From IMG/VR virus record IMGVR_UViG_3300042482_000702, positions 248,001-312,000 of that record: DNA of 64,000 bases. One strand, given 5' to 3'. The position numbers were made by a program, and so were the translations under genes. Shown in pieces: positions 8,566 to 44,088 of this stretch (the stretch's first letter is position 1; every line of letters begins with the position of its first letter). Below the pieces are notes generated by a model, which saw only the letters and a list, made by a program, of their open reading frames with translations, searched no databases and was not told where the DNA came from.

Positions 8566-10617
8566 ATGATAGAATCTATGGATGGTAACGAAGGAAGAGG
8601 TAAGAACACAAGTGTTTCCGAATCAGCAACACCAGTGTTAGACAATTTTAGTCGAGATTTAATAAAATTGGCTGAAGAAGGGAAATTAGACCCTGTTATT
8701 GGTAGAGAAAGTGAAATAACGAGAATTGCTCAAATTCTTTCTCGTAGAAAGAAAAATAACCCAATTATTATTGGAGAACCTGGTTGTGGTAAAACCGCCA
8801 TTGTTGAGGGTCTCGCAATTAAAATCTATAATGGGGATTGTCCAAGAAATTTAATGGATAAAAGAATCGTATCATTAGATATGACATCAATCGTTGCCGG
8901 AACAAAGTATCGTGGTCAATTTGAAGAACGAATGAAAGTAATTATAGAAGAATTACAAAACGCACCAAACATCATCGTATTCATTGATGAGATTCATACC
9001 ATTGTTGGAGCGGGAAATTCATCAGGTTCAATGGACGCATCAAACATCTTTAAACCAGCTCTTGCTCGTGGAGAAATCCAATGTGTTGGAGCAACAACAT
9101 TAGATGAATATAGAAAAAACTTTGAGAAAGATGGAGCGTTAGAAAGACGATTCCAAAAAGTTGTTGTTGATTCACCAACCAAAGGGGAAACATTACTTAT
9201 CTTGGAACAATCAAAGGAAAAATATGAATCTTACCACAAGGTAACTTATTCCAACGAGATTTTAAATCTATGTGTGGATTTAGCAGAAAGATATATCACC
9301 GATAGAGAATTTCCGGACAAGGCGTTTGACATCTTGGATGAGGTTGGGGCGAGAAGTCAGGTTGAAATTAAAATGCCGGATTCAATTGAAAAATTGAAAT
9401 TACAAGCGTCCGATATTAAACAACAAAAAATGGATGTTGTTAAACGACAAGATTACGAAGAAGCGGCAAATTTACGAGATAAAGAAAAGAGAGTTTTAAC
9501 CAAACTTGAAACTGAAAAGAAAAAGTTTGAAGAGGAACTCTTAACTAATAAAAAAGAGATTACTGTTGATTTGGTTTATGAGGTTGTATCCAATATTACC
9601 AAAATTCCAATCACCAAATTAAACTCTGATGAGACTAAATTATTATCCGAAATGGAAAATAATTTATCCGATAAGGTTATTGGACAATCTGATGCAGTTT
9701 CAAAAATTGCCAAGTCAATTAGAAGAAGTAGAATCGGGATTAAAGACCCAAACAAACCAATTGGTTCATTTATCTTTTTAGGTTCAACTGGTGTTGGTAA
9801 AACATATCTAGCAAAACAACTCGCCAAACAAATGTTCGGTAGTGAGGATAATATGATTCGTGTGGATATGTCGGAATACCAAGAAAAACATACCATATCA
9901 AGATTAATCGGAGCTCCTAGCGGATATGTTGGGTATGAAGATGGGGGACAACTAACCGAACAGGTTAAAAATAAACCATATTCTGTTATTCTATTTGATG
10001 AGGTTGAGAAAGCTCATAAAGATATTTTCTCCACACTTCTTCAAGTATTGGATGAAGGACACTTAACCGATAGTTTAGGTAAGAAAATCAATTTCAAAAA
10101 TTGTGTGATTATTATGACCTCAAATGTTGGTGCCAAAAAATTACAAGATTTTGGTTCAGGTGTTGGTTTTAAAACGGGGGGAAGTGCTTATGTTGAGGAG
10201 GAATATCGTAGAGATGTTTTGAAAAAGGAATTAAAGAAATTCTTTACTCCGGAATTCTTAAATCGTGTGGACGAAATTGTAATCTTTAATTCTTTAGTGA
10301 AAGAAGATGTTAAAAAAATTGTGAAATTAGAATTGGATATTCTAACTAAACGATTAACCGGAATGAAATATAACATCACTTTTGATGGTAGTGTTTTAGA
10401 TTTAATATCTGATGTTGGATTTGATGAGACATACGGAGCAAGACCGATTAAAAGAGCTATCCAAGATAAACTTGAGGATTTTGTATCTGAAGAGATTATA
10501 AAAGGAAATGTTGTAGAAAACACTCCATACACAATCACCTCTGTTGATAAGGAAATTAAATTTCAAGAGGTTGTTGAAGTTGTGAAAAAGACAAGAAAGA
10601 AAAAGGGGGATTTATAA
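8566..10617 (+). CDS. clpC: ClpC-type AAA+ unfoldase lacking the N-terminal Clp-repeat domain
   Basis: Two Walker A motifs ([16 protein letters not shown]), pore loops KYRG and GYVG, UVR-like [11 protein letters not shown], ClpP-docking-like GVGF. Confidence 0.9.
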
Positions 10618-11223: not shown

Positions 11224-12045
11224 TTAAAATTTATAAAAATATTTTGAATCCGTTTTGTATAAATATTTTTTATACCCCAAATCCTGAATCATCTTTTTAC
11301 CGGTCTCTATTCCATTATAAACATCCTCAACAACCACATACTCATTTCTTGTGTGATAGTCGTAATAACCTATCGCAAAATTGATACAGGAGAAGTCAAA
11401 TAAGTTCTTCAGAGCATAAACATCAGTATATGGGTTTGAAAAGTATTCTTGTTCACCCTTAAAGTTTTCTGTTAAGACATTATCACATGTCTTAAAAAAA
11501 TCACTCTCTCGGTCAAACAATTGTGTTCCCATACAAAATTCTGTAACCATTCTGTTTCCCGGAGCATCAAATTGAATTCCGTATCCTACATTTATAAAAA
11601 AATTGGGGTCAGCCTTTTTGGACCCGTGACATCCGGTTTCTTCAGATACAAAGAAAGCCGCCTTTAGATTTGGCAATTCTTTTAATAATTCCAAACAAGC
11701 ATAAACACCACATTTATCATCACCACCAATACCGGTTGGATTTCCAAAATCGTTATAAGCCTTTAACGCTGGTTTGAGTTCATATTGATTGTTCTGTAAC
11801 ATTTCCTCACGAATATTTATCGTGTCTATGTTATGAACCGTATCTGTATGAGCAATTACACAGGGAAAATAATCGATAAATTCGTCTGTTTGTTTTATAG
11901 CGTAGATATTTTTATGTTCATCCACATTGAAGGGAATCCCATTTTCCTCTAACCAGTTGATTAGAAAATCTACCATTCTGTCCTCTTGATATGTTTTTGT
12001 CGGAACCGACAATACATCTTTTAATAATTGATAATTTCTTTCCAT
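11224..12045 (-). CDS. M20/M28-family zinc peptidase
   Basis: AHTDTV, GGDDKCG, SEETG, and YHT metal ligands. Confidence 0.85.
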   Translation of the reverse strand: MERNYQLLKDVLSVPTKTYQEDRMVDFLINWLEENGIPFNVDEHKNIYAIKQTDEFIDYFPCVIAHTDTVHNIDTINIREEMLQNNQYELKPALKAYNDFGNPTGIGGDDKCGVYACLELLKELPNLKAAFFVSEETGCHGSKKADPNFFINVGYGIQFDAPGNRMVTEFCMGTQLFDRESDFFKTCDNVLTENFKGEQEYFSNPYTDVYALKNLFDFSCINFAIGYYDYHTRNEYVVVEDVYNGIETGKKMIQDLGYKKYLYKTDSKYFYKF

Positions 12046-12086: not shown

Positions 12087-13454
12087 TTAATTTATTCTAA
12101 CAAAACCCTCAAATAATTCAGGTGAAACTAAAAAGTTATTAAATTCTTCTTCGGTATAACTTCTACGAGCAACACCATTTTTAGTGAAAACATCCATATG
12201 TATTCTATTTGTTGCCGGGTCAATTTCTCTAATAAAAAATTCTCTACCATACGAAGTCTTACTTCTAGTGTTAGTCGGGTATTTAGATATAACTCTATCG
12301 TAGATATCTGAGTATTCTAAAATATCAACATACTTATCGGATTGTTCTAATTCCTCAAGTATTTCATCTAATTCTTCCCCTATAACAAGATTAAGTCGCT
12401 CATCATCAAAATCGTTACATTGTATTTCATATCTATATTCATCCCACCCACCAGTGTTAAATGTGTGTCCAATATCTGTTAAAACACCCTTAATGTCTTT
12501 AGTGGGGTCTTGACTAATCTTAAACATTGATAATAAAAGACCAACAGTGGTATAATAAGTTCTAAAACAATCTATATTGATTAACCCATAATTTTGAAAA
12601 ATTTCACAAATTTCATCGTTAATTTGTTTTTTAGCCTCATCGTGACGACAATTATTTTCAAGGTCTACATACTCTTCTAACATACTTTCAATTTTACCCG
12701 CAAACATATCCGACAATTTTTCAGCAGCCTTTTCTTTCTTTTCATCATCGTCTAAAGAAATTAAATCAGGTGAAATATATTTTAAAATTTGTTTTAATTT
12801 ACCCTTATTTTCATCTGAAAACCAACCGAAAAAATACCCCCCATTCCAATCATCAACCGCTGTTTCATAATCAATATAATCATATCCATTATCATAATAC
12901 GAAAATAAACTACTAACATAATAAACATCATCTTCTTCAACCTCAAATAATTTAACATAATCTTCTATATCATCAAAATGTAATTTGATTGTACTTTTAC
13001 CCGGATTTTTTTCGTTGTAATTAAATTTATAAATTAAATTGTCAGCACGTTCCATTTCATTAGATGATACCTGTTCACCATTCTTAATCTTAACTAACAA
13101 GTCATAAATTGGACTATAACCAATTATGGGTTCAAGTTCTGATTTAACATCATTAGGTAATTCGTGGAATAATTCATTTCTAGTTATGACTCTATTTCTC
13201 ATAACCTCACTACCAATATATTCTATCTTATGGTCGGTATCATTTCTAAAAATAGTGTATGTCTGAATCGGTTCTTTATCCTTATCAATAACAAAATAAA
13301 CATCACCATCCCTAAATTTATTAGTCCATTCTGGTTTAAGTTTTTCCGGTGCAAAATATTCAAACGCCAAACCTGTCATTGGCTCAACTATCATCCAATC
13401 TTCAGTGTTTAATATAGTTTGACTTTGCTCGTAAGCGTCGTTTTTAGTGGGCAT
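12087..13454 (-). CDS. Hypothetical acidic protein
   Basis: 455-aa ORF with TATTTAT motif upstream. Confidence 0.7.
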   Translation of the reverse strand: MPTKNDAYEQSQTILNTEDWMIVEPMTGLAFEYFAPEKLKPEWTNKFRDGDVYFVIDKDKEPIQTYTIFRNDTDHKIEYIGSEVMRNRVITRNELFHELPNDVKSELEPIIGYSPIYDLLVKIKNGEQVSSNEMERADNLIYKFNYNEKNPGKSTIKLHFDDIEDYVKLFEVEEDDVYYVSSLFSYYDNGYDYIDYETAVDDWNGGYFFGWFSDENKGKLKQILKYISPDLISLDDDEKKEKAAEKLSDMFAGKIESMLEEYVDLENNCRHDEAKKQINDEICEIFQNYGLINIDCFRTYYTTVGLLLSMFKISQDPTKDIKGVLTDIGHTFNTGGWDEYRYEIQCNDFDDERLNLVIGEELDEILEELEQSDKYVDILEYSDIYDRVISKYPTNTRSKTSYGREFFIREIDPATNRIHMDVFTKNGVARRSYTEEEFNNFLVSPELFEGFVRIN

Positions 13455-13485: not shown

Positions 13486-13518
13486 ATTTGGAATTATCTA
13501 AAAATGTATTATCTTTGT
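13486..13518 (+). promoter_or_regulatory. Bacteroidota sigma-A promoter for tmRNA
   Basis: TTTG (-33) ... TATCTTTG (-7 TAnnTTTG) just upstream of the tmRNA 5' end. Confidence 0.75.
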
Positions 13519-13531: not shown

Positions 13532-13940
13532 GGGAGTGACACGGAATTGACTATTCGTAATAGTTATTCGGGGCACGTAGTGAGATGTTCTCTATCACTT
13601 AAATCTATGGGTACAACAATTTAGACGGAAACGTTTTAAACAAAATGGCTCTAGTAGGTCTTGTACGTCAAGATGAGCTTGTGAACGTAGCGTAAGCAAA
13701 CACACATTGGGGTCGACGGATATGTGTACCTAGCAACAGAAATATCTTAAGGTGTGATACCACCCGAAGAGTGTCAAGGTCTCGTTTGAGGGTCTACCTA
13801 TTAAAGTGAACCTCCCACAGTTGTAGGTAATGATGGAAAAATTAGAACCTTCTATTTGTCAGTTGAGAATTAACTGAATAAACGTGTAGTCCTTAATAGG
13901 TAATACAAATAACACTTGGGTTCGAGTCCCAACACTTCCA
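13532..13940 (+). ncRNA. ssrA: tmRNA
   Basis: Acceptor GGGAGTG/CACTTCC with G3-U70; 5' GGAATTGAC; T-arm TTGGG-TTCGAGT-CCCAA; internal tag ORF 13627..13695; smpB nearby. Confidence 0.92.
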
Positions 13941-14065
13941 CGTCCACTGGAGAGTCCCAACACCTCCACACAAAAAAGAGACCTAAATGGTCTCTTTTTT
14001 TATTGATAATCACCAATAAAAAAACCACCCGAAGGTGGCTTATTATCAGTTCAAATGTTTATTTT

Positions 14066-14431
14066 TTAATCTTTTAATACTTGTTTATCCCCAACCGGAG
14101 ATGTGAATTTGGATGTTAATTTATCTAATCTTGAATCAAAATTTCTATATACATCACTAAACATTTTATCTACGTCATCCATTCTTTTGTTGGTGTACAT
14201 ATTTGTTTCAGTATATAATCTATCAACCCTATCAATCTCCCCATCAATACGACGGTTTAGAGAATCTCCACCACTATTAATATCATTAAAGATATGTCCT
14301 TGAACTTGTTCTAATTGTTTGCATTTATTTTTTAATCTGTTAATCTGAATGCACATTATAACCATAACCACAACTCCCAGTACCCCGAGAACCAAACCTA
14401 TACCCATAATGAACGATGTTAAATCTACCAT
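14066..14431 (-). CDS. Membrane-anchored coiled-coil protein
   Basis: N-terminal hydrophobic helix followed by heptads. Confidence 0.6.
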   Translation of the reverse strand: MVDLTSFIMGIGLVLGVLGVVVMVIMCIQINRLKNKCKQLEQVQGHIFNDINSGGDSLNRRIDGEIDRVDRLYTETNMYTNKRMDDVDKMFSDVYRNFDSRLDKLTSKFTSPVGDKQVLKD

Positions 14432-14492: not shown

Positions 14493-14930
14493 CTATTTCA
14501 AGTCCCTTTTCATATCTCTTTCGATGTCCCGAGATTTGATGGTATCTCGTTTATCGTATGTTTTCTTCCCTTTGGCAAGAGCAATTTCCATTTTAATTAA
14601 TCCGGTGTCGTTTATGAAGATACGATAAGGAACGATGGTTACACCATTGATTAACTCATTCTCCCACTTATTAAGTTCTTTTCGTTTGGCTAATAGTTTT
14701 CTATCCTTTACGGTCTCGTGGAAGGACCCAAACCCATAATCGGAGATATTCATCCCCTTTATAAATAACTCCCCCTCATTGAAATAACAATACCCTTCAG
14801 AGATGGATACCTTTCCCTGACGAATGGACTTTACCTCTGAACCAACTAGTTTGATTCCCACAATTAATGTCTGTAGGAATGAATACTCAAACTTGGCTTT
14901 CTTATTGACTATGTTAATTGAATTTTTCAT
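14493..14930 (-). CDS. smpB: SsrA-binding protein SmpB
   Basis: NKKAKFEY, GIKLVGSEVKSIR, RKLL, AKGKKTYDKR motifs. Confidence 0.97.
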   Translation of the reverse strand: MKNSINIVNKKAKFEYSFLQTLIVGIKLVGSEVKSIRQGKVSISEGYCYFNEGELFIKGMNISDYGFGSFHETVKDRKLLAKRKELNKWENELINGVTIVPYRIFINDTGLIKMEIALAKGKKTYDKRDTIKSRDIERDMKRDLK

Positions 14931-14998: not shown

Positions 14999-15883
14999 GG
15001 CTTAATACGATGAGAATACTCGTCTTATTGAGAATCTTCGGAAGGATTATTGTTTCCCTTCGTTTCCACCATCTTTTGAATGGTAACCCTCATTGCCGAT
15101 TGGTTAGACCAATCACTCCTTGAGATATCATCTACTCTCTCATTATTCAACTCTCTTTAACCTTGCGAGCTAACTCCGGATTCGACTCCGTAGAGGTTTT
15201 TGGCGAGAATACATTCAGACTTGCGGTCATCCTGTGCAACGAACGGCTCGTTACTATGTAGGCAACTTGTCGACGATACCTGGTAAACATTTTTGCTATT
15301 GTCTATTTAGTTTTTCACCATATGAAAATAGTTAATGTGTTGTGGATGTATTCAGGAAGTAGTTTACCGTAAGCTCCCTAACCTTTTGGGTTAAAGAATA
15401 CTAAACTTCCCGATGAGATATCCCTATCTCCAAATTTCAAGAATTCTTCAAATCAATATCTTGGTAGATATTTGATAGGGATAAAGTCAGCACCACCTGT
15501 TACTTAATCTTGCCTTTCGGCGTTAAGATTCCTTTTATTTTGGAACCCGCAATTATAAGGTCGGATAACCCTATTTCTTACTTGATTCCTATGGGTTCTT
15601 CTTATCTTGATTCCTCAATCAACCGGACAATCCACATTGCCAAGTTAGTATTCCATTTCCCTACGAAGTTATCCTCGGTACTACAGGACTACTAATATCC
15701 CACTTGCTTACTCGAGTTCGGTTTCCCAAACCACAAAATCACTAACACAAATGATTTCATTTTATCCCCGTTTCCGGGATTATTTAAAGATGATAAGCCA
15801 CCTATTATCTTTGATACAACACCGAAGTGTTATAATGGATAATCTAAAATTTCTAAGAACGTCTTTAAGGTTTCCCTTAATTG
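14963..15883 (-). ncRNA. Large (~920 nt) structured ncRNA, GOLLD-like candidate
   Basis: No credible ORF; own TAnnTTTG promoter (15889-15896) and terminator; many minus-strand GNRA/UUCG-capped hairpins. Confidence 0.7.
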
Positions 15884-16044: not shown

Positions 16045-16136
16045 GTGGTATCAGATGGATTCGAACCACCGGCACAGGGTTTTTCAGAACCCTTGCTCTA
16101 CCAAGGAAGATAAATCTCCCACTGAGCTATAATACC
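16045..16136 (-). tRNA. Atypical tRNA-Phe-like (GAA) with a hairpin inserted in the D-loop and an irregular anticodon loop
   Basis: Acceptor GGTATTA/TGATACC, normal T-arm, D-loop insert GGGAGATTTATCTTCC, anticodon arm AGGGT-TCTGAAAA-ACCCT. Confidence 0.6.
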
Positions 16137-16147
16137 ATATAAAATAA

Positions 16148-16222
16148 TGTGGGTGTATGCTCTACCATCTGAGCTACGGATTTGAAACCGGAGGGATTTG
16201 AAACCTCGACACAACACCCACA
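16148..16222 (-). ncRNA. Circularly permuted tRNA mimic (YrlA/Y-RNA-like) #2
   Basis: GTGGGTGT/ACACCCAC terminal helix; T-arm-like GAGG-TTTCAAAT-CCCTC; CGG-loop-CCG; D-arm TAGCTCAGATGGTAGAGC. Confidence 0.7.
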
Positions 16223-16300
16223 CCATTAATTCAATGAACTTATTTTCTTCTACAAAGATAATACATTTATTTTAATCTGTCAAATCTTTTTTGATTTTTT

Positions 16301-16510
16301 TTAATTCATATTATCCAAGAACATTTCGGTAATCTCATCTTCCTCTTCATCTGTCCCTTCGGCTCCGTTATGCCACTCTATATTATCTACAGTATAATCG
16401 TCCCAAGTATCCCAAAACGCGTGAATTGTAAATTCTCTTCCATCCTCTGTTTGACCATCATAATCGTAATTTGCTGAAGTTAGAACTTCGCTTGAATAAT
16501 TTATTTCCAT
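16301..16510 (-). CDS. Small acidic hypothetical protein
   Basis: ORF track. Confidence 0.6.
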   Translation of the reverse strand: MEINYSSEVLTSANYDYDGQTEDGREFTIHAFWDTWDDYTVDNIEWHNGAEGTDEEEDEITEMFLDNMN

Positions 16511-16530
16511 TTTTTCTTTTTTTTAATTAG

Positions 16531-16607
16531 TAGTCAGAACAGGATTCGAACCTGTGTACCCTCGTATGAGTTCGTCATACCGTGCATCTCCAATGTGCTA
16601 CCTGACT
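16531..16607 (-). ncRNA. tRNA-like RNA with non-canonical anticodon arm
   Basis: Acceptor AGTCAGG/TCTGACT and perfect T-arm ACAGG-TTCGAAT-CCTGT; anticodon arm TATGA-CGAAC-TCATA lacks U33. Confidence 0.55.
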
Positions 16608-34026: not shown

Positions 34027-34308
34027 AATTTCCTTATTTTATTTTTTATGTTTATTGAACTTCTCTTCGTTGGTATCAATTCCAACTCAAATGCCACTTT
34101 GGACACGAGAACCTCAGCAACAAGGTTTCATTTATAAATATAAGGATGTTTTGTTTTATTGTAAATAAAAAACCCCCAAGTTTCCTCGGAGGTTCTATGT
34201 AGGAGTTCTCGGGTATCTACACTGATTAACGACAATCAGACCATCGTTCGCGACCTGTAAGAGTCCAACGACTGATATTATACTATACTTACACTCAAAT
34301 ATCTATTG

Positions 34309-34381
34309 TGGTCCCGGAGAATTACGATATCCCGACTTCTACATTATGAGTGTAGCACTCTAACCTCTGAGTTACGAGACC
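34309..34381 (-). tRNA. tRNA CAT (Ile2 or Met)
   Basis: Cloverleaf; loop CTCATAA; T-loop ATCGTAA. Confidence 0.8.
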
Positions 34382-34421
34382 AATTATGGGTTTTTAATGA
34401 ACCCATAAAACATATGTCAAT

Positions 34422-34655
34422 TTATTGGTGGTGCTTAATGTACCTCCCAAATTTATCAACCCTCACAGAGAGTTTCTCCAATCTAAAGTTCCAATTATCG
34501 AACTTTCCTAAGCCAGATTTTACTCTCGCCTGTTTAACCGCAGATACTTCTGCCTTCTCACGTCCTTCTTCCGTAGTTTCTACGAAAAAAGTGGGAGCCT
34601 GAACACCAGTCTTACTGGTAGGGACTACTCTCCAAATTCTCAATTTCTGAGTCAT
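34422..34655 (-). CDS. Small hypothetical protein in tRNA array
   Basis: ORF track. Confidence 0.55.
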   Translation of the reverse strand: MTQKLRIWRVVPTSKTGVQAPTFFVETTEEGREKAEVSAVKQARVKSGLGKFDNWNFRLEKLSVRVDKFGRYIKHHQ

Positions 34656-34830
34656 AAATTTTAGCTAATAGCTAAAACTATGTGGAGTTGGGTTGGTTGT
34701 TTTTCATATTAATTAGTTTAATTTTTTAAATAAAATGATGTTTAAATCTCCAAGTAAAAAAAAATACTGTTATTAGTAGTATTATCTTTATTACCTTAAT
34801 AATCTTTTTTCCCATATTGATAATATTTTG

Positions 34831-34915
34831 TATCCGGAGAGGGACTTGAACCCTCAATCTCCTTTCGGAAAACTAGATTTTAAGTCTAGCGTGTATACCA
34901 TTTCACCACCCAGAT
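34831..34915 (-). tRNA. tRNA-Leu(TAA)
   Basis: Loop CTTAAAA; long variable arm with GAAA. Confidence 0.9.
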
Positions 34916-35135
34916 GTGTTCCCCCAATGAGATTAGTTTGGGGTAGAATTTTTTCGGTTTTTCTATTCAAAAGTCGAGACGGTCTTACCCGCACATAAAA
35001 GTCAACTATTACTTGGAGGTGAGTTAGTATGCTCCCTTTTTTCCAAAGACCTCATCTATCAAACCGTTTGAGGCGTCAGCTACATCTTTGTTTAAGAAAC
35101 GATGCCAAATCTCTTGAGTATCTCTATCTCAATTG

Positions 35136-35216
35136 AGCTTCCGGTTGGATTCGAACCAACGTGCCATTCGGTCCTACTTACAAAATAGGTGCAATCAACC
35201 ACTATGCGACGGAAGC
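35136..35216 (-). tRNA. tRNA-Thr(TGT) with enlarged variable region
   Basis: Loop TTTGTAA; 12-nt variable region. Confidence 0.85.
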
Positions 35217-35426
35217 CTGTTGCAGAGTATTTTTTTTAAGTAGAAGTCAACTCTGTCTCTTAAACTACTAAAAGAAACTGTCCAAGGTCTATCCTGCTTT
35301 CGCTGTCCAGATTTTTCTCTGTTTCTTAAAACATCATCACTTCGGCCACATTGGGAGAACCGCAGTTCCCACGTTGTTTAAGGAGGTAGTTGGCGGTGTA
35401 TCACACCGAGTTATGATAATGTATTG

Positions 35427-35500
35427 TACCCCCAGTGAGAGTCGAACTCACAAAACTCTTCATCCTAAGTGAAGCGACTTTCCCGTTTGTCCACAGGGGT
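35427..35500 (-). tRNA. tRNA-Leu(TAG) with short variable loop
   Basis: Loop CTTAGGA; variable region AGTTTT. Confidence 0.85.
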
Positions 35501-35562
35501 AAATTGATGGGACTTTAACCCATCTGTTGACTATAACAAAAACATAAAGAAAGAAAAATTAG

Positions 35563-35684
35563 TAGTGTAGATAGGAATCGAACCTACCTCGATGAATTAC
35601 TTGTAATATGCACCAACTCTTCTCTCCAATCCTAGTATTAAGGAGTGTTACCTACAAATTACCATCACTCAACCCTTTTACACC
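35563..35684 (-). ncRNA. tRNA-like RNA: acceptor and T-arm, no D-stem, long irregular helix in place of the anticodon arm
   Basis: GGTGTA/TACACT; GTAGG-TTCGATT-CCTAT; GATG GTAATTTGTA ... TACAAGTAATT CATC. Confidence 0.6.
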
Positions 35685-35689
35685 ATTTG

Positions 35690-35761
35690 TGACTCCACAG
35701 GGATTCGAACCCCGATAATTTCCTTAGAAGAGAAATGTCCTATCCGTTGAACGATGGAGCC
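35690..35761 (-). tRNA. tRNA-Arg(TCT)
   Basis: Loop CTTCTAA. Confidence 0.9.
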
Positions 35762-35766
35762 AATTT

Positions 35767-35984
35767 ATTCTGTTACCGACATAGATTGGTAATTAAGTGT
35801 GAAAGCCCAAACCCTTTCACTCCCGTATTATCATCCTGCCACATTCTTGACGAATGCCGACGTTTTCACTTAACCTTCCGTTAGACATGCGAATCTATGT
35901 TTTCTGTATGTGGTGAGTAACTTCCTTCCCCACTTGTGTTTCCGAGATATCGAGGGCACCATACTGTCTAACGTCAAACAGAAT
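35767..35984 (-). ncRNA. Candidate ~220-nt pseudoknotted ncRNA
   Basis: Terminal 8-bp stem plus two crossing 9-bp helices. Confidence 0.55.
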
Positions 35985-36194
35985 ATAATTTTTAAAATAG
36001 TTTGACCAAATTTTTCACCATTGCGGTCTTAAGGAGCTATGACTTCATCTCCATGTCCGTTATGGGTAATTACTCCCAGATGGATGACCGGTGCGCCGTT
36101 GTCTTTCATCATACTTTTCACCAACCTATGTGTTAAAGGGTTCCGGCAGTGTCCCCGAAGGTTACTTCATATAATTACTTTTTCACTATTTTTG

Positions 36195-36266
36195 AGCGAA
36201 TGGAGGGAATCGAACCCTCATCCCTTGATTGGAAGTCAAGAGTAATGACCATTATACGACATTCGC
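36195..36266 (-). tRNA. tRNA-Gly(TCC)
   Basis: Loop CTTCCAA; U73. Confidence 0.92.
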
Positions 36267-36399
36267 AGTTTAGATGAACTTCGGACTTGTGTACCGAAAT
36301 GAGACCCAATAATTAAATCACTAACCCCGGGTGTGGTCTATTCATCTATTTTTTTAAGCTTATACCTTTAAAATAAATTTTAATTTTAAGCTTATAAGC

Positions 36400-36573
36400 T
36401 TAAACTTTCGTTTTAAGGTTGTTAATCTCCTTCTCGATTCTTTTCTTATCAGAATCAGTTAAAGGAATCTTGGTATTCATAGTACCCTTTTCGGTTTTTA
36501 CACCATTTTTTAATTGTTTCTCCAACACTTCAAGAACTCTTTGTTGTCTTGACCTTTTCGCTGCTGTTGCCAT
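36400..36573 (-). CDS. Small basic protein (57 aa, not in ORF track)
   Basis: MATAAKRSRQQRVLEVLEKQLK...INNLKTKV. Confidence 0.55.
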   Translation of the reverse strand: MATAAKRSRQQRVLEVLEKQLKNGVKTEKGTMNTKIPLTDSDKKRIEKEINNLKTKV

Positions 36574-36595
36574 ACGGATTTAGTTATTAAATTAG

Positions 36596-36668
36596 TAGCG
36601 TAGGGCAGGTAACGCTCCTGCTTTGGTCGGCTTATGAGACCGATGAGATACTATACCTCCCCCTCGCG
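36596..36668 (-). tRNA. tRNA-Met(CAT), initiator-like
   Basis: C1 mismatched with position 72; loop CTCATAA; T-loop AGCGTTA. Confidence 0.7.
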
Positions 36669-36683
36669 ATGTATTATTTTTTG

Positions 36684-36755
36684 CGGTCTATGAGAGAATC
36701 GAACTCTCATCTCTACCGTGACAGGGTAGCATCCTAGCCGTTGAACGAATAGACC
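36684..36755 (-). tRNA. tRNA-Asp(GTC)
   Basis: Loop CTGTCAC; G73. Confidence 0.92.
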
Positions 36756-36896
36756 AAAATTTTCAATCCAAAGGTGACAAACCTATAACAATTGAAAGAG
36801 AAAGAACCGTGTTTCCCGGGTAGTGACTTCCCGTATTCTGTCTTCCTGTTTTGTTTTACAAAGATAGTTATTAAATCTTTAATAACCAATTTTTTT

Positions 36897-37502
36897 TTAC
36901 ACCATTTTATTAAGTGTTGGTAAATACCATTTAAATCTCACCGCCATTACTCTAACTGATATAATCACTAATGAAGTGGTTAAATATAACACATCTGAGT
37001 TTAGGTTAAATTTCCTAAGTATGAAGAACACAATCCCCCCTAATATACAAATGGTAGCATATATTTCTTTTTTAAAGATAACCGGTATTTCAGCACATAG
37101 AATATCTCTAATCACACCACCAAAACAAGCGGTCATTGTACCTAATGCGATACATATAATGGGATGTAGACCAATGTTTATTCCTTTTTCTAACCCAATC
37201 AATGTGAATACCCCTAAACCGATTGTATCAAATATAAAAAGATATATTTTAAATTTCTCTATTAGTTGTTTGAATAATAATGTTACTATAAACCCTGTTA
37301 TTATTACATAGATATAATCTATGTTGAGCATCCATCCCACCGGTGTTCTTCCAATCATTACATCTCTCAGTGTTCCTCCACCTAATGCGGTTACGAATGT
37401 AATTATAAACACACCAAATAAATCCATTTTTTTATCTATGGATACTAAAGCTCCGGATATGGCAAATGCCAGTGTTCCTATTAGGTCTAATAAATTAAAC
37501 AT
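36897..37502 (-). CDS. TRIC/UPF0126 (YadS-like) membrane protein
   Basis: Duplicated GTLAFAISGA...GGGTLRD and GLGVF...FGGVIRD repeats. Confidence 0.9.
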   Translation of the reverse strand: MFNLLDLIGTLAFAISGALVSIDKKMDLFGVFIITFVTALGGGTLRDVMIGRTPVGWMLNIDYIYVIITGFIVTLLFKQLIEKFKIYLFIFDTIGLGVFTLIGLEKGINIGLHPIICIALGTMTACFGGVIRDILCAEIPVIFKKEIYATICILGGIVFFILRKFNLNSDVLYLTTSLVIISVRVMAVRFKWYLPTLNKMV

Positions 37503-37549
37503 TAATCATTTATTTTAAATTAATTGGTCTTAACAATAGACCTTTTTTG

Positions 37550-37621
37550 TGGAGCTACACGGTAACGCTCCGTGTTCTATGATTTGCAAAACCATTGTAA
37601 TTGCTTTTATACGACAGCCCC
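37550..37621 (-). tRNA. tRNA-Ala(TGC)
   Basis: G3-U70; loop TTTGCAA; T-loop AGCGTTA. Confidence 0.85.
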
Positions 37622-37682
37622 AATTTTGGATAGATGAGGTTCTATCCGGACCAGTACCTTCTCCCTTGGGAGATGTCAGTTG

Positions 37683-37754
37683 TAGCCCCACCGGGAGTCG
37701 AACCCGACTTTTATGGATGAAAACCATATGTCCTAACCGATAGACGATAGGGCC
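37683..37754 (-). tRNA. tRNA-Glu(TTC)
   Basis: Loop TTTTCAT. Confidence 0.9.
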
Positions 37755-38108
37755 GTTTTGTATTACCAATATGTCAATTAACTTGTTTGTTTTTGATGGT
37801 ACAAAGATAATGCTTTATTTCATTCCACCAAACTTATTCTTCAATAATATTATTCAGAACCAAATCTAATGCGTGGTCTTCATCCCACTCTGATTCATCA
37901 ACAACATTTTTTAATCCGTAGGTTACTCCCAATATCGGTGAGTAATCCATAACCAATTCTTCTCTAATCATACCTGTTATTATTTTTTAGTTATTTTATC
38001 CACATATTTTTTACCTACGGCTACTAATAAAATAAAACATATCAATAATCCACTAATAATAACCACCAATTGTTCTCCTGTATATTCTTCCATATCTTTA
38101 ATTTGTTT

Positions 38109-38339
38109 TTACCAAGTATTGGTGTTATAAATACAAAACTCTGAACCCACTTGGGCGTTTCTCCAATCATTCGGATATAGATAAAATAATTTATCATCAC
38201 CGGTACATTCATTTCTAATTACAACAGAATAATCTCGTACTCTATTACTAACCACTAAACCACAATTACAACTCACATACTCATTAATAGAACAAGATAA
38301 GAATAGTGGGATAACTATAATTAAAATTAATTTTTTCAT
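38109..38339 (-). CDS. Small lipoprotein-like protein (start MKKLIL)
   Basis: Signal peptide ending FLSC; promoter at about 38357. Confidence 0.6.
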   Translation of the reverse strand: MKKLILIIVIPLFLSCSINEYVSCNCGLVVSNRVRDYSVVIRNECTGDDKLFYLYPNDWRNAQVGSEFCIYNTNTW

Positions 38340-38395
38340 AACCCTTTTATTTTTGACAAAGATACAACTTAATTTCATTCTACCAAATATAAATC

Positions 38396-38532
38396 AAAAA
38401 AAAAATCCACCTTTTTTTGAAGATGGATTTTTAAATATTTTTTTACTTAAATATATATCATACCATCGTCTTCCAAGTTGTATCTCTACCCTCAGTTCCC
38501 GCTATCGTAAGTAATATGTTTAAAGTTTGCAT
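38396..38532 (-). promoter_or_regulatory. Leader peptide (38458..38532) plus terminator: putative attenuator
   Basis: 24-aa ORF MQTLNILLTIAGTEGRDTTWKTMV; GAAGA/GATGG in the ORF can pair with the terminator arm CCATCTTC. Confidence 0.5.
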
Positions 38533-38662
38533 TTTTTGTGTTATTGTAATTTCTAATAAATATACGACATTTTGTGAAAGTGTCAAGTGGTTTTAAAATT
38601 ATTTTTTAAACTTAATCATAATTTAAGATATTTATAGTAAATAAACTTTTAAAAATTCAATT

Positions 38663-38833
38663 ATGAATAAAGAACAAATTTTTGGTGTTATTCGCCACGT
38701 ATTCACTGCCATTGGTGGTATTGTCATTGCACAAGGTTACATATCTGATAGTATGTACACTGAATTATCCGGAGCGATATTAACATTAACTGGTGTAATT
38801 TGGTCAATTGTTGCTAAAAAATCTACAGTATAA
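38663..38833 (+). CDS. Small two-TM putative holin (56 aa, not in ORF track)
   Basis: MNKEQIFGVIRHVFTAIGG...GVIWSIVAKK; TATTTATA upstream. Confidence 0.65.
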   Translation: MNKEQIFGVIRHVFTAIGGIVIAQGYISDSMYTELSGAILTLTGVIWSIVAKKSTV

Positions 38834-39597
38834 TAAACAGAAAAAGGTTAGAGAAATCTAACCTTTTTTTATGCCTTTAAGTTAAATAAAAAAAAGCTTA
38901 ACAACCCCGCCCTCGGGTCGTAGCGGGCAACTTGAGAATTACTTCTCGTGGGAATTCCGGAATTGGTTGTGTTCCTCACCGGCGTACCAGTCCTTATCTA
39001 TCCTTTAACCGTATTTCTACGGTGCTACTGTTGGGAGGTCACCCCTATCAACACACCTAGTCCATTAGTTTTTTAGAGTATGGACACCCCGGTTGTTAAA
39101 CTTTTTAATTTAATATTCTCTTACATAACGGCGATTATCGCCGGTATTAACCTAATTGGTAAATAAAAAAACAGACAATGGGGATTCTCCGATATTTCAG
39201 TCTTAGGGGACTAGACGGGCATCATACCCGTGTTTACCCTCGGCGGTCTCTTGGTTTGGTTGATTACTCCAAACCTCACCCCTACACTACCACTGACGTA
39301 AGTTATAGGTCTGTTTTTAATTCTTTGTAAAACAACAGACGGCTTTGAAGTACATCCACACCAACAATTATGACCGACTTCACCTTATGTGGAAGTTTAG
39401 TTTTACAATATCTATCAAGATTTACCCCAGTCTTTAGGTCGCTATTAATACCTTTAACCCATACTCTCGGAACACTATGGAGATGGAATCAAACCATCTA
39501 ATAACCCGTCGGTTATAGCGTCAGCCTTATATTTCCTATCTTTTGGAGATAACTTTCGTCTGTCACCTTATTCAACCTTATATGAATAAATCTTTTG

Positions 39598-39704
39598 CCC
39601 TTCCAGTGGGAATCGAACCCACATACTCTTAATACATTCTTGGAATGGTTACCGGAGGGAGATGTATTCGTCTCTGTGTTTTGCTCTTTTTAAACTACAG
39701 AAGG
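39598..39704 (-). ncRNA. tRNA-like RNA with an expanded anticodon arm
   Basis: Acceptor CCTTCTG/TGGAAGG; D- and T-arms present; about 55-nt central region with AATACAT/ATGTATT helix. Confidence 0.55.
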
Positions 39705-39710
39705 ATTTTG

Positions 39711-39781
39711 CACGTTTGATAGGTCTCGAACCCATACAAATTCTTTTGGAGAGAATTATGCTACCATTACATCACAAACGT
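39711..39781 (-). tRNA. tRNA-Trp(CCA)
   Basis: Loop CTCCAAA. Confidence 0.9.
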
Positions 39782-39782
39782 A

Positions 39783-40430
39783 TTATTTTAACCATTTTCT
39801 AACAGCGTTATCACTAACACCATATTTACGACCTGTTCCTCTATACCCAAGATTAATAATATCTTGTTTTATTTGTTCTATGGACGGTCTTTCAACTTTT
39901 CTATTTTGTTTATTTGAACATTTAATACATTTATCACTTTTTTTATCTTTTGTACTACCACATTCACAATGATATTTAATTTTATTGGATTTCCCGGAAT
40001 ATGTACTAGTTTGGGAGTGACAATTAGGACATAAAAATCTTAAATTTTCTATTCTATTATCATTATTAACTCCATTTATATGGTCTAAATGTAGACTAAT
40101 ATTTTTACCATTCCACACCCCATTATTACCACATTCAATACATTTATATTCAAGTAAATTTTTCTTTAATATTCTATTTTTAATTTTTTGTCTTGGAAAT
40201 GTTGAATTTTCAACAAAAACATCCTCATCTAATCTAACCTCTTTAGGTCCAGTCCCATAATAATTATATTTAGGAATCTCTAATCCCAATTTAATTATTC
40301 TATCTTTAATGTTCCTATAACCACCCGAACCATTTGGTGATAAATTAAATAATAAAATAACCTCTCTCATAGATTTTGAATTATTCAAAATTTCAAATAA
40401 CTCTTCTTTTGTAATAGTTTTTAAGTTCAT
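39783..40430 (-). CDS. HNH homing endonuclease inside the tRNA array
   Basis: CIECG...LHLDHINGVNNDNRIENLRFLCPNCHSQT; C-terminal HTH. Confidence 0.9.
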   Translation of the reverse strand: MNLKTITKEELFEILNNSKSMREVILLFNLSPNGSGGYRNIKDRIIKLGLEIPKYNYYGTGPKEVRLDEDVFVENSTFPRQKIKNRILKKNLLEYKCIECGNNGVWNGKNISLHLDHINGVNNDNRIENLRFLCPNCHSQTSTYSGKSNKIKYHCECGSTKDKKSDKCIKCSNKQNRKVERPSIEQIKQDIINLGYRGTGRKYGVSDNAVRKWLK

Positions 40431-40661
40431 ATTATGTCTTTTATTATAAATATCTTAAAAAATACCAAAGTTCACCATAACCTATGTTTTACCAAAAATA
40501 ATAACATAATCATTCGTAGTCCCCTGCCGGGCAACCCTCCTACTTTTTCACACAATCCGGATGCCTCCAAATCTAATTTTCTTTTTTACCCCTATTAAGA
40601 AACGCGTTTTCCGTTCGGTAGTTCAAGCCCATTTTCGTGAGTTAAATAATTATGTTATTTG

Positions 40662-40744
40662 AGTTCAGGGTCGGATTCGAACCGACGAGGACTTTCGTCA
40701 TTGGTTTTGCAGACCAATCTAATCAACCACTCTAGCACCTGAAC
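40662..40744 (-). tRNA. tRNA-Cys(GCA) with long variable arm
   Basis: Loop CTGCAAA; U73; GAC-GAAA-GTC variable hairpin. Confidence 0.88.
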
Positions 40745-40805
40745 ATTTAAAGTAAAATATAATTTACAAATACACCCATTTTTGTAAATTATATTTAATG
40801 TTAAT

Positions 40806-41186
40806 TTAATAACCTATTTCATCTTTAACCTCCCATTGTTTATCAATGGGGATTCTTTCAATCTTTTCCACCGGAACAAATCCGTCAAATCCTTTGTCTT
40901 TAACATCTTCAAAATGTTCTATGGTGTCCAAGTAAAATCCAAATTGATATCTAACGTATTGGAACTTCTCTCCGTCCCAATAAGCGACGTGGTTGTTTCT
41001 ACAGAAACCATTATACCACCCCTCAACCATTTCATTTTTTGGTATCATCATTTCTATTTTTATATTAGCACCCTTGTCTATATAGCCTGAATCTCTCAAG
41101 CGCCATGCCTTATTAGGGTCTCTATATAAACTTAGGGTCACGTAGTTACTGGATGAACCCAAATAACTTACTTGCTGAGAACTCAT
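40806..41186 (-). CDS. Hypothetical protein (true start probably downstream, near MIPKNEM)
   Basis: ORF; the annotated 5' end overlaps an RNA motif. Confidence 0.55.
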   Translation of the reverse strand: MSSQQVSYLGSSSNYVTLSLYRDPNKAWRLRDSGYIDKGANIKIEMMIPKNEMVEGWYNGFCRNNHVAYWDGEKFQYVRYQFGFYLDTIEHFEDVKDKGFDGFVPVEKIERIPIDKQWEVKDEIGY

Positions 41187-41250
41187 TTGTGTTGATAGAG
41201 GCGTTCTCTATACGTTTAATTTACCTATTCCTTTCTCAAGGGAACAACAC
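41171..41250 (-). ncRNA. Pseudoknotted scaffold RNA, copy A
   Basis: GTGTTGTTCCCTTGAGAAAGGAA-[insert]-AACACAAATGAGTTCTCAG. Confidence 0.65.
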
Positions 41251-41547
41251 ATCTACCATTTCTGATAGTATCTTTATGTAAATAACCAAGACAATTGTAC
41301 AAATGCTACCACGTATTTCTTTGGTTCACTTATTATTTACAAAGGTTTCAATGTTTAACCTATTTTTACAACGATACAATTACATTTCTACTTTTGAGAA
41401 TCTTTCTCAAAAAAACTAATCTTTTTCTATGATTAACATACTCATCAGCATCATTGGCTTTATGACCTCTAAATATTGATTCGGTTATCTCACAATCCAA
41501 TTTAATAATTTCGGTTATTATCTCCTCCGTGGTTAAATTACTTTTTT

Positions 41548-44084: not shown

Positions 44085-44088
44085 AATT

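What the first reader, a model, noticed from the sequence alone, without database searches (positions are those of the whole stretch)
13627..13695. Phage tmRNA with an unusually long, non-ALAA tag
After TTAGAC the frame reads GNVLNKMALVGLVRQDELVNVA* (22 codons). Bacteroidota tags are typically about 10 aa and end in YALAA. An internal MALVG looks like an older tag end that was extended. Rescued proteins may escape host ClpXP or be rerouted. The resume codon is inferred.
Basis: partly seen in the sequence, partly recalled or inferred. Interest (0 to 1): 0.65.

Follow-up and report, generated by a model that had tools for sequence, protein, structure and literature searches.

The report
Jumbo-phage tmRNA with long tag
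A 322-kb lake-water phage of Bacteroidota carries its own expressed ribosome-rescue RNA (tmRNA) and partner protein SmpB, and the RNA encodes a conserved 22-residue tail ending in -VA instead of the host phylum's 9-10-residue -LAA/-MAA tail, so rescued proteins are probably marked for a different reader than the host's tagged proteins.

Summary
Window 13532..13940 (+) is a real tmRNA gene: Rfam gives 62 bits over the full model, the helices covary, and G3:U70 is invariant. The gene lies in a 322-kb jumbo phage from lake water. In three metatranscriptomes it appears as a discrete RNA while the flanking genes are silent. GGA at 13627 is the resume codon, with the frame-setting A four bases upstream, and it opens GNVLNKMALVGLVRQDELVNVA followed by TAA. 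Thirty-eight related phage loci encode nine variants of this tag, all 21-22 aa, with G1, K6, G11, L12, R14 and the last A invariant. All 52 sampled cellular tags of the host phylum are 8-15 aa and end in LAA or MAA. The phage also encodes a full-length SmpB 550 nt away, a ClpC-type unfoldase without its N-domain 3 kb away (this linkage is kept in four near-complete relatives), and a ClpP homologue. The idea that "MALVG" is an old tag end is not supported. "Escape from ClpXP" is untested, and a -LVA end is an efficient degron in E. coli. Phage tmRNA with SmpB is already known; this conserved long tag family is not described in the searched literature. I rate it a new variant of a known kind, of moderate interest.

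The parts
13487..13517 (+). Bacteroidota-type promoter-like elements: TTTG (13487..13490) and TAtcTTTG (13510..13517), the latter ending 14 nt before the mature 5' end
   Evidence: A TAnnTTTG box lies upstream of 25 of 25 homologous genes, at exactly 14 nt in 18 of them. That this is the Bacteroidota consensus rests on my own knowledge of the sigma-A promoter (-33 TTTG, -7 TAnnTTTG).
13532..13940 (+). tmRNA gene, from the 5' G of the acceptor stem to the discriminator A. The 3' CCA is not encoded (CGU follows).
   Evidence: Rfam RF00023, 62.3 bits, model positions 1-374. Relaxed ARAGORN gives the same boundaries. Metatranscriptome contigs cover 13541..13938 and 13553..13941.
13532..13538 (+). 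5' strand of the acceptor stem (GGGAGUG). It pairs with 13933..13939 (CACUUCC) and includes the G3:U70 alanine identity pair.
   Evidence: 98% of cells are paired, 4 of 7 pairs show compensatory double changes, and G:U is kept in 25 of 25 sequences.
13580..13615 (+). Pseudoknot 1. Stem 1 is 13580..13583 with 13595..13598; stem 2 is 13586..13592 with 13609..13615.
   Evidence: Stem 1 is 99% paired. Stem 2 is 69% paired, with 3 pairs changed on both sides. Stem 2 corresponds to the hairpin in the Rfam model.
13622..13626 (+). Frame-setting pentamer UAGAC. The A at 13623 is 4 nt before the resume codon.
   Evidence: The A at -4 is invariant in 25 of 25 sequences. In E. coli the equivalent A86 in UAGUC is the main frame determinant and acts as a ruler 4 nt from the resume codon (PMC2481249).
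13627..13695 (+). Tag reading frame: resume codon GGA, 22 codons (GNVLNKMALVGLVRQDELVNVA), stop TAA at 13693..13695
   Evidence: The exact 51-nt 3' part occurs in 32 viral and 35 metagenome contigs.
13916..13932 (+). T-arm (UUGGG / UUCGAGU / CCCAA)
   Evidence: All 5 stem pairs show compensatory changes across relatives.
13952..13969 (+). Relic copy of a tmRNA 3' end (T-loop 3' half plus acceptor 3' strand CACCUCC), 17 of 18 identical to 13924..13941. It is not part of the mature RNA.
   Evidence: Direct repeat D1. The same kind of relic occurs in L008/L012/L016 and L023/L024, and none was found in 135 bacterial loci. RNA contigs stop at 13938 and 13941.
13972..14000 (.). Perfect 12-bp hairpin flanked by A and T runs; probably a two-way terminator between the tmRNA gene and the convergent gene
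   Evidence: Inverted repeat I3, 100% complementary.
14493..14930 (-). smpB: phage-encoded SmpB of 145 aa, full length including the basic C-terminal tail
   Evidence: Pfam PF01668, E = 9e-47, profile positions 2-142 of 143. It aligns to solved SmpB chains through the tail. It is convergent with the tmRNA gene in 38 related loci.
8566..10617 (+). ClpC-type double-ring AAA+ unfoldase of 683 aa. It lacks the N-terminal adaptor-binding domain and keeps a GVGF loop at the ClpP-docking position.
   Evidence: E = 3e-224 to S. aureus ClpC, aligned to ClpC residues 142-812. Pfam finds AAA, AAA_lid_9, AAA_2 and ClpB_D2-small. It lies 2-6 kb from the tmRNA gene in four near-complete relatives.

Best explanation
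This is a working, phage-encoded trans-translation module. Shown: a dedicated Bacteroidota-type promoter precedes a 409-nt tmRNA gene, and the RNA accumulates as a discrete species. Inferred: the 3' CCA is added after transcription, since it is not encoded and the phage has a nucleotidyltransferase of the CCA-adding family. Host AlaRS charges the RNA through the invariant G3:U70 pair, since the phage has no AlaRS. The phage's own SmpB then delivers it to ribosomes stalled on broken or stop-less mRNAs during infection. Translation resumes at GGA (13627), positioned by the A four bases upstream, and adds Ala plus GNVLNKMALVGLVRQDELVNVA before the TAA stop releases the ribosome. I think the primary benefit is keeping ribosomes free in a cell whose mRNAs and tRNAs are being damaged; the same genome region carries about 25 tRNA genes. 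The tag itself is under selection as a peptide. It most likely acts as a degradation signal for AAA+ proteases: its aliphatic -V-A carboxy-terminus serves as the engagement site, and the conserved middle (K6, G11-L12, R14, then an acidic pair) serves as a second recognition element that cellular 9-10-aa tags do not have.
For: RNA identity: full-length Rfam match. Covariation on 25 unique relatives shows 23 pairs changed on both sides, against 15.4 +/- 1.8 in shuffles (0 of 500 reach it) and 6-12 in slid controls. G3:U70 is kept in 25 of 25, and all five T-stem pairs covary.

Frame: the Rfam resume position, the invariant A at -4 (rule from PMC2481249), ARAGORN calls in three relatives, and stops in the other two frames.

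Peptide selection: there are nine tag variants, all 21-22 aa, with six invariant residues and mostly V/I/L, D/E or S/A swaps. Third codon positions vary most. pN/pS is 0.47.

Departure from the host phylum: 52 of 52 cellular tags end in LAA or MAA and are 8-15 aa long. No relative of the RNA was found in 401 genomes searched.

Expression: in runs X16, X17 and X18 (three studies), contigs cover the tmRNA and the GOLLD region only, with zero depth on the flanking ORFs. One 389-nt contig matches 13553..13941 with no mismatch.

Partners: full-length SmpB next door. A ClpC-type ATPase with a VGF-type loop stays linked to the tmRNA gene even in G148, where smpB lies far away. The ClpP homologue has an intact Ser-His-Asp triad. 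There is a CCA-adding-family ORF but no AlaRS.

Degron plausibility: -LVA is an efficient degron in E. coli (PMC3511798). A long 27-aa tag is read by Lon in M. pneumoniae (PMC8403727).
Against: There is no direct evidence of tagging or degradation. Assembled contigs cannot show the strand or the exact ends of the RNA. The Rfam score is modest, and the alignment through pseudoknots 2-4 has low posterior probability. pN/pS of 0.47 is only moderate constraint. Within the commonest tag type there is almost no synonymous change even between RNAs that differ by about 45% in the pseudoknot region. This could reflect nucleotide-level constraint or recent recombination rather than selection on the peptide. 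The link to clpC is synteny only. The ClpC-D2/ClpP docking test gave only weak support: ipSAE 0.38, best control 0.00, at least 85% of contacts agreed between runs, and partner pLDDT was at least 81; passes at 0.60 or below were reached by only 5 of the 78 solved complexes and by all 4 mismatched pairs that passed. The ClpP homologue also matches phage head-maturation protease families. The tag is unchanged between genomes whose ClpC is only 68% identical, so there is no sign of tag-ClpC co-variation.
Confidence: 0.7

Rival explanations
1. Rescue only. The module exists to free ribosomes, and the tag is not a degradation signal. Tagged products are stable or irrelevant, which is the reader's 'escape ClpXP' reading. 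The conservation reflects the needs of the mRNA-like domain, such as staying unstructured, being decoded efficiently and terminating well.
For: The tag lacks the [LM]AA end that all 52 sampled cellular tags of the phylum share. The tag-coding nucleotides are conserved well beyond what the peptide requires: an exact 51-mer occurs in 32 viral and 35 metagenome contigs, and tag identity is 94-100% where the rest of the RNA has diverged. [quoted passage not shown]
Against: Across the more distant variants the codons change but the residue classes and six positions are kept, which RNA-level constraint does not predict. An aliphatic-Ala C-terminus is the kind of end that Clp proteases accept (-LVA). 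The module sits beside protease genes.
Confidence: 0.2
2. Private degron. The tag is read mainly or only by the phage's own N-domain-less ClpC with ClpP. The phage would then clear its failed translation products without competing for host ClpXP, and host-tagged proteins would be handled separately.
For: clpC lies 2-6 kb from the tmRNA gene in the window and in four near-complete relatives, including G148, where smpB has moved away. The ATPase keeps the VGF-type ClpP-docking loop but lacks the adaptor-binding N-domain. The ClpP homologue has an intact triad and is closer to cellular ClpP (E = 2.5e-46) than to phage head proteases (E = 5.5e-31). The docking test gave weak support: ipSAE 0.38 against a best control of 0.00, with at least 85% of contacts agreed between runs and partner pLDDT at least 81; a pass at this level is more often wrong than right unless the pairing was already likely.
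Against: This rests on synteny alone, within a family of otherwise collinear genomes. The tag is identical where ClpC has diverged to 68% identity. clpP lies far from clpC in the genome and may be a head protease. The complex support is weak by the tool's own calibration.
Confidence: 0.2
3. Interference. The phage tmRNA-SmpB pair mainly competes with the host system on stalled ribosomes. The aim would be to blunt host responses that depend on trans-translation or on stalled ribosomes, and the tag content would be secondary.
For: A phage TLD-only tmRNA (mycobacteriophage DS6A type) has been reported to inhibit the endogenous tmRNA (PMC4131195; PMC11915505). The pair here is complete and abundant in RNA libraries.
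Against: An inhibitor would not need an intact, conserved 22-codon frame with the correct frame-setting A and a stop codon in every relative.
Confidence: 0.08
4. Not a phage gene: host DNA flanking a prophage, an assembly chimera, or a decaying pseudogene.
For: ARAGORN does not call it at default thresholds. A relic 3' end lies beside it, the kind of repeat seen where elements integrate at ssrA.
Against: It lies 13 kb into a window of a 322-kb virus record that CheckV rates complete. It is conserved in 38 viral loci and four near-complete 282-318-kb genomes. No relative was found in 401 cellular genomes searched. It shows covariation and expression. The repeat copies are only 10 nt apart, so no element lies between them.
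Confidence: 0.02

Closest known systems
Cellular one-piece tmRNA (Rfam RF00023) with SmpB, as in Bacteroidota
   Same: It has a tRNA-like domain with G3:U70, a long helix 2 and pseudoknot 1. An A lies 4 nt before a Gly resume codon, and Gly also starts 15 of the 52 sampled Bacteroidota tags. A single short frame ends in a stop, and SmpB is the partner.
   Different: The tag is 21-22 aa instead of 8-15. It ends in [VT]A instead of [LM]AA and has a conserved K..GL.R core. The Rfam score is 62 bits against 88-198 bits for the cellular RNAs. No BLAST-level relative was found in the 401 genomes searched. It is encoded by a virus, next to its own smpB.
tmRNA and SmpB genes of huge phages (Al-Shayeb et al. 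2020, PMC7162821), Lak megaphages and LR7565xx genomes
   Same: These are phage-encoded tmRNA plus SmpB in phages above 200 kb predicted to infect Bacteroidota. Their SmpB is about 48% identical to the one here.
   Different: That paper lists the genes and does not discuss the tags. Lak phages have ordinary 10-aa tags, DDEI[DE]FRMAA. LR756504 has an unrelated 24-aa tag ending in VAA. LR756501 and G150 seem to share a 33-37-aa tag. The tag family described here is specific to this lake-water clade of about 280-320 kb.
Mycoplasma long ssrA tag read by Lon (Gur and Sauer 2008, cited in PMC8403727)
   Same: It is an unusually long tag (27 aa), rich in hydrophobic residues, without the canonical LAA end, and it still works as a degron through a different protease.
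   Different: In Mycoplasma the switch goes with the loss of ClpXP from the cell. Here the host presumably keeps its own system, and the phage adds a second one. The phage genome has no Lon but has ClpC and ClpP homologues.
Mycobacteriophage and Bacillus phage G tmRNAs (PMC4131195)
   Same: They are phage-borne ssrA genes, including one that is only a tRNA-like domain.
   Different: That paper does not report smpB in those phages. Their hosts belong to other phyla. I could not compare their tags with the tools at hand. My recollection that the Bxz1 tag is also long is from memory only.
ClpC of Firmicutes (S. aureus, B. subtilis)
   Same: The neighbouring ATPase aligns end to end with ClpC residues 142-812, including both AAA+ rings, the short middle region and the ClpP-docking loop.
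   Different: It lacks the N-terminal domain that binds MecA-type adaptors and phospho-arginine, so it must select its substrates in some other way.

Membership tests
tmRNA (RF00023) | Sequence and structure match above the curated threshold over the whole model | tested here: met
   62.3 bits against a gathering score of 47, model positions 1-374, E = 6e-22.
tmRNA (RF00023) | tRNA-like domain: 7-bp acceptor stem and T-arm supported by covariation | tested here: met
   The acceptor stem is 98% paired with 4 covarying pairs, and the T-stem covaries at 5 of 5 pairs.
tmRNA (RF00023) | G3:U70 pair (alanine identity element) | tested here: met
   G:U is present in 25 of 25 unique sequences.
tmRNA (RF00023) | Helix 2 and pseudoknot 1 between the tRNA-like domain and the tag | tested here: met
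   Helix 2 has 10 of 20 pairs with double changes. PK1 stem 1 is 99% paired and stem 2 is 69% paired.
tmRNA (RF00023) | Pseudoknots 2-4 downstream of the tag | tested here: inconclusive
   The Rfam alignment has low posterior probability here. RNAalifold on sub-blocks gave only fragments. The region is highly variable with large indels.
tmRNA (RF00023) | Short open frame with a resume codon set by a conserved A 4 nt upstream, ending in a stop codon | tested here: met
   the rule is from PMC2481249.
tmRNA (RF00023) | Tag ends in a hydrophobic Ala-Ala type degron | tested here: not met
   The tag ends in N-V-A here and in V-V-A, A-V-A, V-T-A or T-V-A in relatives, against LAA or MAA in 52 of 52 cellular tags. 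This feature is typical of the family but does not define it.
tmRNA (RF00023) | A cognate SmpB is present | tested here: met
   PF01668, E = 9e-47, full length with the C-terminal tail, 550 nt away.
tmRNA (RF00023) | Accumulates as a stable RNA | tested here: met
   In three metatranscriptome studies the contigs are confined to the gene and the flanks are silent. Strand and exact ends are not shown.
tmRNA (RF00023) | Alanylation and tagging of nascent chains | not testable with these tools
   This needs biochemistry or proteomics.
ClpC-type Hsp100 unfoldase (the neighbouring gene) | Two AAA+ modules with a ClpP-docking loop | tested here: met
   Pfam finds AAA plus AAA_2. GVGF aligns with the loop of S. 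aureus ClpC.
ClpC-type Hsp100 unfoldase (the neighbouring gene) | N-terminal Clp repeat domain that binds adaptors | tested here: not met
   The alignment starts at ClpC residue 142, and there is no Clp_N hit in Pfam.
ClpC-type Hsp100 unfoldase (the neighbouring gene) | Binds ClpP | tested here: inconclusive
   Weak support only: ipSAE 0.38, best control 0.00, at least 85% of contacts agreed between runs, partner pLDDT at least 81. Passes at 0.60 or below were reached by only 5 of 78 solved complexes and by all 4 mismatches that passed.

The most novel reading that the evidence does not exclude
The phage runs a self-contained, orthogonal protein-disposal circuit: its own tmRNA and SmpB write a 22-residue mark that only its own N-domain-less ClpC, with ClpP, reads. 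Failed phage translation products would then be cleared and recycled (an M20/M28-like peptidase gene lies in the same cluster) without drawing on host ClpXP and without being confused with host-tagged proteins. Distinct long tags in other huge phages (24, 33 and 37 aa) would then be parallel private codes.
Probability: 0.15. Interest if true: 0.8.

Novelty: new variant of a known kind. Interest (0 to 1): 0.55.

Why it matters
Trans-translation is usually seen as a host housekeeping system that phages merely depend on. Here a widespread lake phage lineage carries the RNA, its protein partner and a likely protease next to one another, and it has kept a tag unlike any in its host phylum. If the tag has its own reader, this would be a natural second degradation code inside one cell. 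That is of interest for phage takeover biology, and it could also provide an orthogonal degron-protease pair for Bacteroidota and other bacteria, as mf-Lon did. There is a practical point too: ARAGORN at default settings misses this gene, so surveys that rely on it under-count phage tmRNAs of this kind.

Tried and rejected
(1) A blastn search of the tmRNA region against deposited phage genomes found no match.

(2) An exact 24-mer of the 3' end found only one further viral contig. Going through SmpB was far more productive.

(3) I considered that the SmpB loci without a nearby tmRNA (L027, L030, L033 and others) might be phages lacking the RNA. I rejected this for G148, where the tmRNA is present elsewhere, next to clpC. 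The others were not followed up.

(4) Unconstrained RNAalifold mis-paired the T-arm and gave little for pseudoknots 2-4. I used the canonical helices placed by Rfam instead.

(5) I considered that the relic 3' end might be an att site for integration into host ssrA. I rejected this because the copies are 10 nt apart with nothing between them, the relic recurs in other phage lineages, and it matches none of 135 bacterial loci.

(6) Atlas feature searches of the unannotated ORFs at 12087..13454 and 14066..14431 gave only viral hypothetical proteins. Pfam and PHROGs gave nothing useful for them.

(7) The phage genome has no Lon, SspB or AlaRS.

(8) The ClpC-D2/ClpP complex prediction gave weak support only, so I do not count it as evidence that they bind.

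(9) The tag peptides occur nowhere in the searched literature.

(10) I did not use the large protein searches, because family scans settled the proteins. No genetic code other than table 11 was used. The single read-laying run used 2,601 letters.

Full report
**What is there.** The window is bases 248001-312000 of a 322,477-bp virus record that CheckV rates complete, so the source is a jumbo phage. Public runs that hold the stretch are almost all lake-water or freshwater metagenomes. At 13532..13943 (+) Rfam finds a full-length tmRNA: 62.3 bits against a gathering score of 47, E = 6e-22. The 5' end GGGAGUG pairs with CACUUCC at 13933..13939 and includes a G3:U70 pair. Next come a discriminator A (13940) and CGU, so the CCA end is not encoded. 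ARAGORN calls nothing here at default settings. At 90% thresholds it reports the same boundaries with 'Tag not identified'. The miss therefore comes from the unusual tag context and not from the tRNA-like domain.

**The reading frame.**
- The Rfam alignment lays the model's resume codon on GGA at 13627.
- The pentamer before it is UAGAC, with an A four bases upstream. That A is invariant in all 25 unique relatives aligned. In E. coli the corresponding A86 of UAGUC is the main frame determinant and acts as a ruler four nucleotides from the resume codon (PMC2481249).
- ARAGORN calls three relatives (L034, L035, L043) at default settings, with the same frame and 21-aa tags of the same type.
- In 29 unique homologous RNAs from 38 loci the frame is always open for 21-22 codons and always ends in TAA. 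The +1 frame has 2-5 stops in every RNA, and the +2 frame has at least one in most.

There are nine distinct tags. All start with G, and G1, K6, G11, L12, R14 and the final A never change. The other positions mostly swap within V/I/L, D/E or S/A. Third codon positions vary most: 33 extra states, against 20 and 10 at positions 1 and 2. Pooled pN/pS is 0.47, with pS of 0.5-0.7 between groups, which is near saturation.

**Is it a functional RNA?** I wrote the canonical helices, as placed by Rfam, onto an alignment of 25 unique sequences. With this structure, 83% of cells pair, against 42-47% when the partners are slid by 1-3 columns. Twenty-three pairs change on both sides, against 15.4 +/- 1.8 in shuffles (0 of 500 reach it) and 6-12 in the slid controls. 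The acceptor stem is 98% paired, all five T-stem pairs covary, and G3:U70 is present in 25 of 25. Pseudoknots 2-4 could not be verified; the region is highly variable, with large insertions and deletions.

Every one of the 25 genes has a TAnnTTTG box upstream, and in 18 it lies exactly 14 nt from the mature 5' end. From my own knowledge this is the Bacteroidota sigma-A promoter type. It fits a dedicated promoter read by the host polymerase.

In three freshwater metatranscriptome runs from three different studies, contigs laid on a 2.6-kb stretch cover only the tmRNA (13541..13938 in one run; 13553..13941 without a mismatch in another) and the GOLLD region. Depth is zero over the flanking protein genes. 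Contigs cannot show strand or exact ends. Even so, the pattern is that of a discrete, abundant RNA, and it stops before the relic repeat at 13952.

**Surroundings.** The tmRNA is not alone.
- A full-length SmpB gene lies convergent to it at 14493..14930. It matches PF01668 at E = 9e-47 and includes the basic C-terminal tail.
- A GOLLD RNA follows at 15007..15413 (288 bits), then tRNA genes. About 25 tRNA genes lie in the window.
- Upstream, at 8566..10617, is a 683-aa double-ring AAA+ protein that aligns with S. aureus ClpC from residue 142 to 812 (E = 3e-224). It therefore lacks the adaptor-binding N-domain but keeps GVGF at the ClpP-docking loop.
- Between it and the tmRNA lie an M20/M28-like peptidase gene and two ORFs without recognisable function.
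- Elsewhere the genome has a ClpP homologue with an intact Ser-His-Asp triad. It is closer to cellular ClpP (E = 2.5e-46) than to phage head-protease families (E = 5.5e-31).
- There is a nucleotidyltransferase of the CCA-adding family, but no Lon, SspB or AlaRS.
- In four near-complete relatives (282-318 kb) the tmRNA lies 2-6 kb from clpC. In G148 smpB lies about 190 kb away, yet the tmRNA stays beside clpC and encodes the same tag, with I for V at position 3.
- A docking test of the ClpC D2 ring against the ClpP homologue gave weak support only: ipSAE 0.38, best control 0.00, at least 85% of contacts agreed between runs, partner pLDDT at least 81. By the tool's calibration a pass at this level is more often wrong than right unless the pairing was already likely.

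**Host and baseline.** The closest cellular SmpB proteins are all from Bacteroidota (Ekhidna, Flavobacteriaceae, Aureispira, Saprospiraceae, Dyadobacter) at 48-56% identity. This agrees with the promoter type. I took tmRNAs from 55 genomes of that GTDB phylum, both high-scoring and low-scoring ones, and ARAGORN gave 52 tags. Their lengths are 8-15 aa (50 of 52 are 9 or 10), and all 52 end in LAA or MAA. Fifteen start with Gly. No BLAST-level relative of the phage RNA was found in 401 genomes of the phylum. The phage tag is thus a clear and conserved departure from the host phylum's tags. It is also common: the exact 51-nt 3' part of the tag frame, with one wobble allowed, occurs in 32 viral contigs and 35 metagenome contigs.

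**Wider context.** Phage-encoded tmRNA and SmpB have been reported in huge phages, but without comment on the tags and with ARAGORN as the detector (PMC7162821). They have also been reported in mycobacteriophages and Bacillus phage G (PMC4131195). The deposited phages with the most similar SmpB (about 48% identity) are the Prevotella Lak megaphages and the 636-735-kb genomes LR756501-4.

Their tmRNAs give the following tags when read with the A(-4) rule and relaxed ARAGORN:
- Lak phages: ordinary 10-aa tags, DDEI[DE]FRMAA.
- LR756504: an unrelated 24-aa tag ending in MAVAA.
- LR756501: a 33-aa tag. The RNA match is below threshold, so this is tentative.
- G150, an IMG/VR fragment: a 37-aa tag that appears homologous to the LR756501 tag.

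Long tags therefore recur among environmental huge phages, each lineage with its own sequence, but they are not universal in phages of Bacteroidota.

**How it most likely works.** Shown: a complete, expressed tmRNA-SmpB pair with an intact, conserved tag frame. Inferred from established knowledge of trans-translation: host AlaRS charges the RNA through G3:U70. SmpB brings it to ribosomes stalled at the ends of broken mRNAs. Translation switches to GGA at 13627. Ala plus 22 residues are added, and TAA releases the ribosome.

Keeping ribosomes free during infection, alongside a large tRNA set, is the likely primary benefit. For the tag, I commit to a degradation signal read by AAA+ proteases. 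Its aliphatic -V-A end is of the type that Clp proteases accept: LacI-LVA has a half-life of about 13 min in E. coli, against about 8 min for -LAA (PMC3511798). Its conserved middle is a plausible second contact that short cellular tags lack. The 27-aa Mycoplasma tag, which is read by Lon, shows that long non-canonical tags can be efficient degrons with a changed reader (PMC8403727).

'MALVG' is not a fossil tag end. The homologous stretch is MSAIG, MAAIG, LSAVG or METLG in relatives, it is never followed by a stop, and it overlaps the invariant G11-L12. 'Escape from ClpXP' is not implied by a -VA end.

**Unexplained.** Within the commonest tag type the coding nucleotides are 94-100% identical between RNAs whose pseudoknot region is only 53-58% identical and whose acceptor stems differ. 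Selection on the peptide alone does not predict so little synonymous change. Either the mRNA-like domain is constrained as RNA, or a tag cassette has spread recently by recombination. The backbones do look mosaic, and relic 3' ends beside the gene in three lineages fit an exchange of segments.

**Verdict.** The feature is a new variant of a known kind: a phage-specific tmRNA family with a conserved long tag, embedded in a rescue-and-proteolysis gene cluster. Interest is moderate (0.55). It is not a new principle, but it offers a concrete and testable case for a second, virus-owned degradation code.

Noticed in passing
window 15007..15413 (-): A GOLLD RNA (288 bits) lies directly beside smpB and the tmRNA gene, followed by tRNA genes. 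It is also next to smpB in L027, L030 and L033, and it is very deep in two metatranscriptomes. The function of GOLLD is unknown, and its fixed place in a translation-rescue cluster may be a clue.
   Followed up: partly
window 13952..13969 (+): A relic copy of a tmRNA 3' end lies 10 nt after the functional one. It would pair with a GGGGGUG 5' end and not with this gene's GGGAGUG. The same kind of relic occurs in L008/L012/L016 and L023/L024. It is probably a scar from exchange of the 3' half between tmRNA variants.
   Followed up: partly
alignment A1, columns 403-419 (L007, L048, L028, L015, L020, L042, L039, L224): A subset of the related tmRNAs has a 6-nt T-loop (UUCGAA) instead of the usual 7 nt.
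   Followed up: no
window 13532..13941: ARAGORN misses this tmRNA at default thresholds and cannot identify its tag when relaxed. Surveys of phage genomes that rely on ARAGORN will under-count this family.
   Followed up: yes
L233 (LR756504), L240 (LR756501), L222 (G150), L234/L235 (Lak phages): Other huge phages with a related SmpB have tags of 24, about 33 and about 37 aa. The last two look homologous to each other. The Lak megaphages have ordinary 10-aa tags ending in MAA. The 33-aa reading rests on a sub-threshold RNA match.
   Followed up: partly
window 8566..10617 (+): This is a ClpC-type unfoldase without the N-terminal adaptor domain, conserved at 68-87% identity in related jumbo phages. 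In G150 the homologue matches in several pieces inside 819-826-aa frames, which may mean insertions such as inteins.
   Followed up: partly
window 11224..12045 (-): An M20/M28-like metallopeptidase gene (PHROG 'peptidase', E = 2e-37) lies between clpC and the tmRNA gene.
   Followed up: no
window 34300..45930 (-), 16045..16607 (-): About 25 tRNA genes, mostly in one array on the minus strand, including three tRNA-Pro(UGG). Rfam finds five that ARAGORN does not.
   Followed up: no
G000:C1:12657-13178 (L085:1369-2103) and G000:C1:54616-55035: Outside the window the phage genome has a ClpP homologue with an intact catalytic triad and a roughly 30-aa N-terminal extension, and a nucleotidyltransferase of the CCA-adding family.
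   Followed up: partly
window 13642..13695 and homologues: The tag-coding nucleotides are almost free of synonymous change among otherwise diverged RNAs. The exact 51-mer is found in 32 viral and 35 metagenome contigs, including one TARA contig and one contig from a marine assembly.
   Followed up: partly
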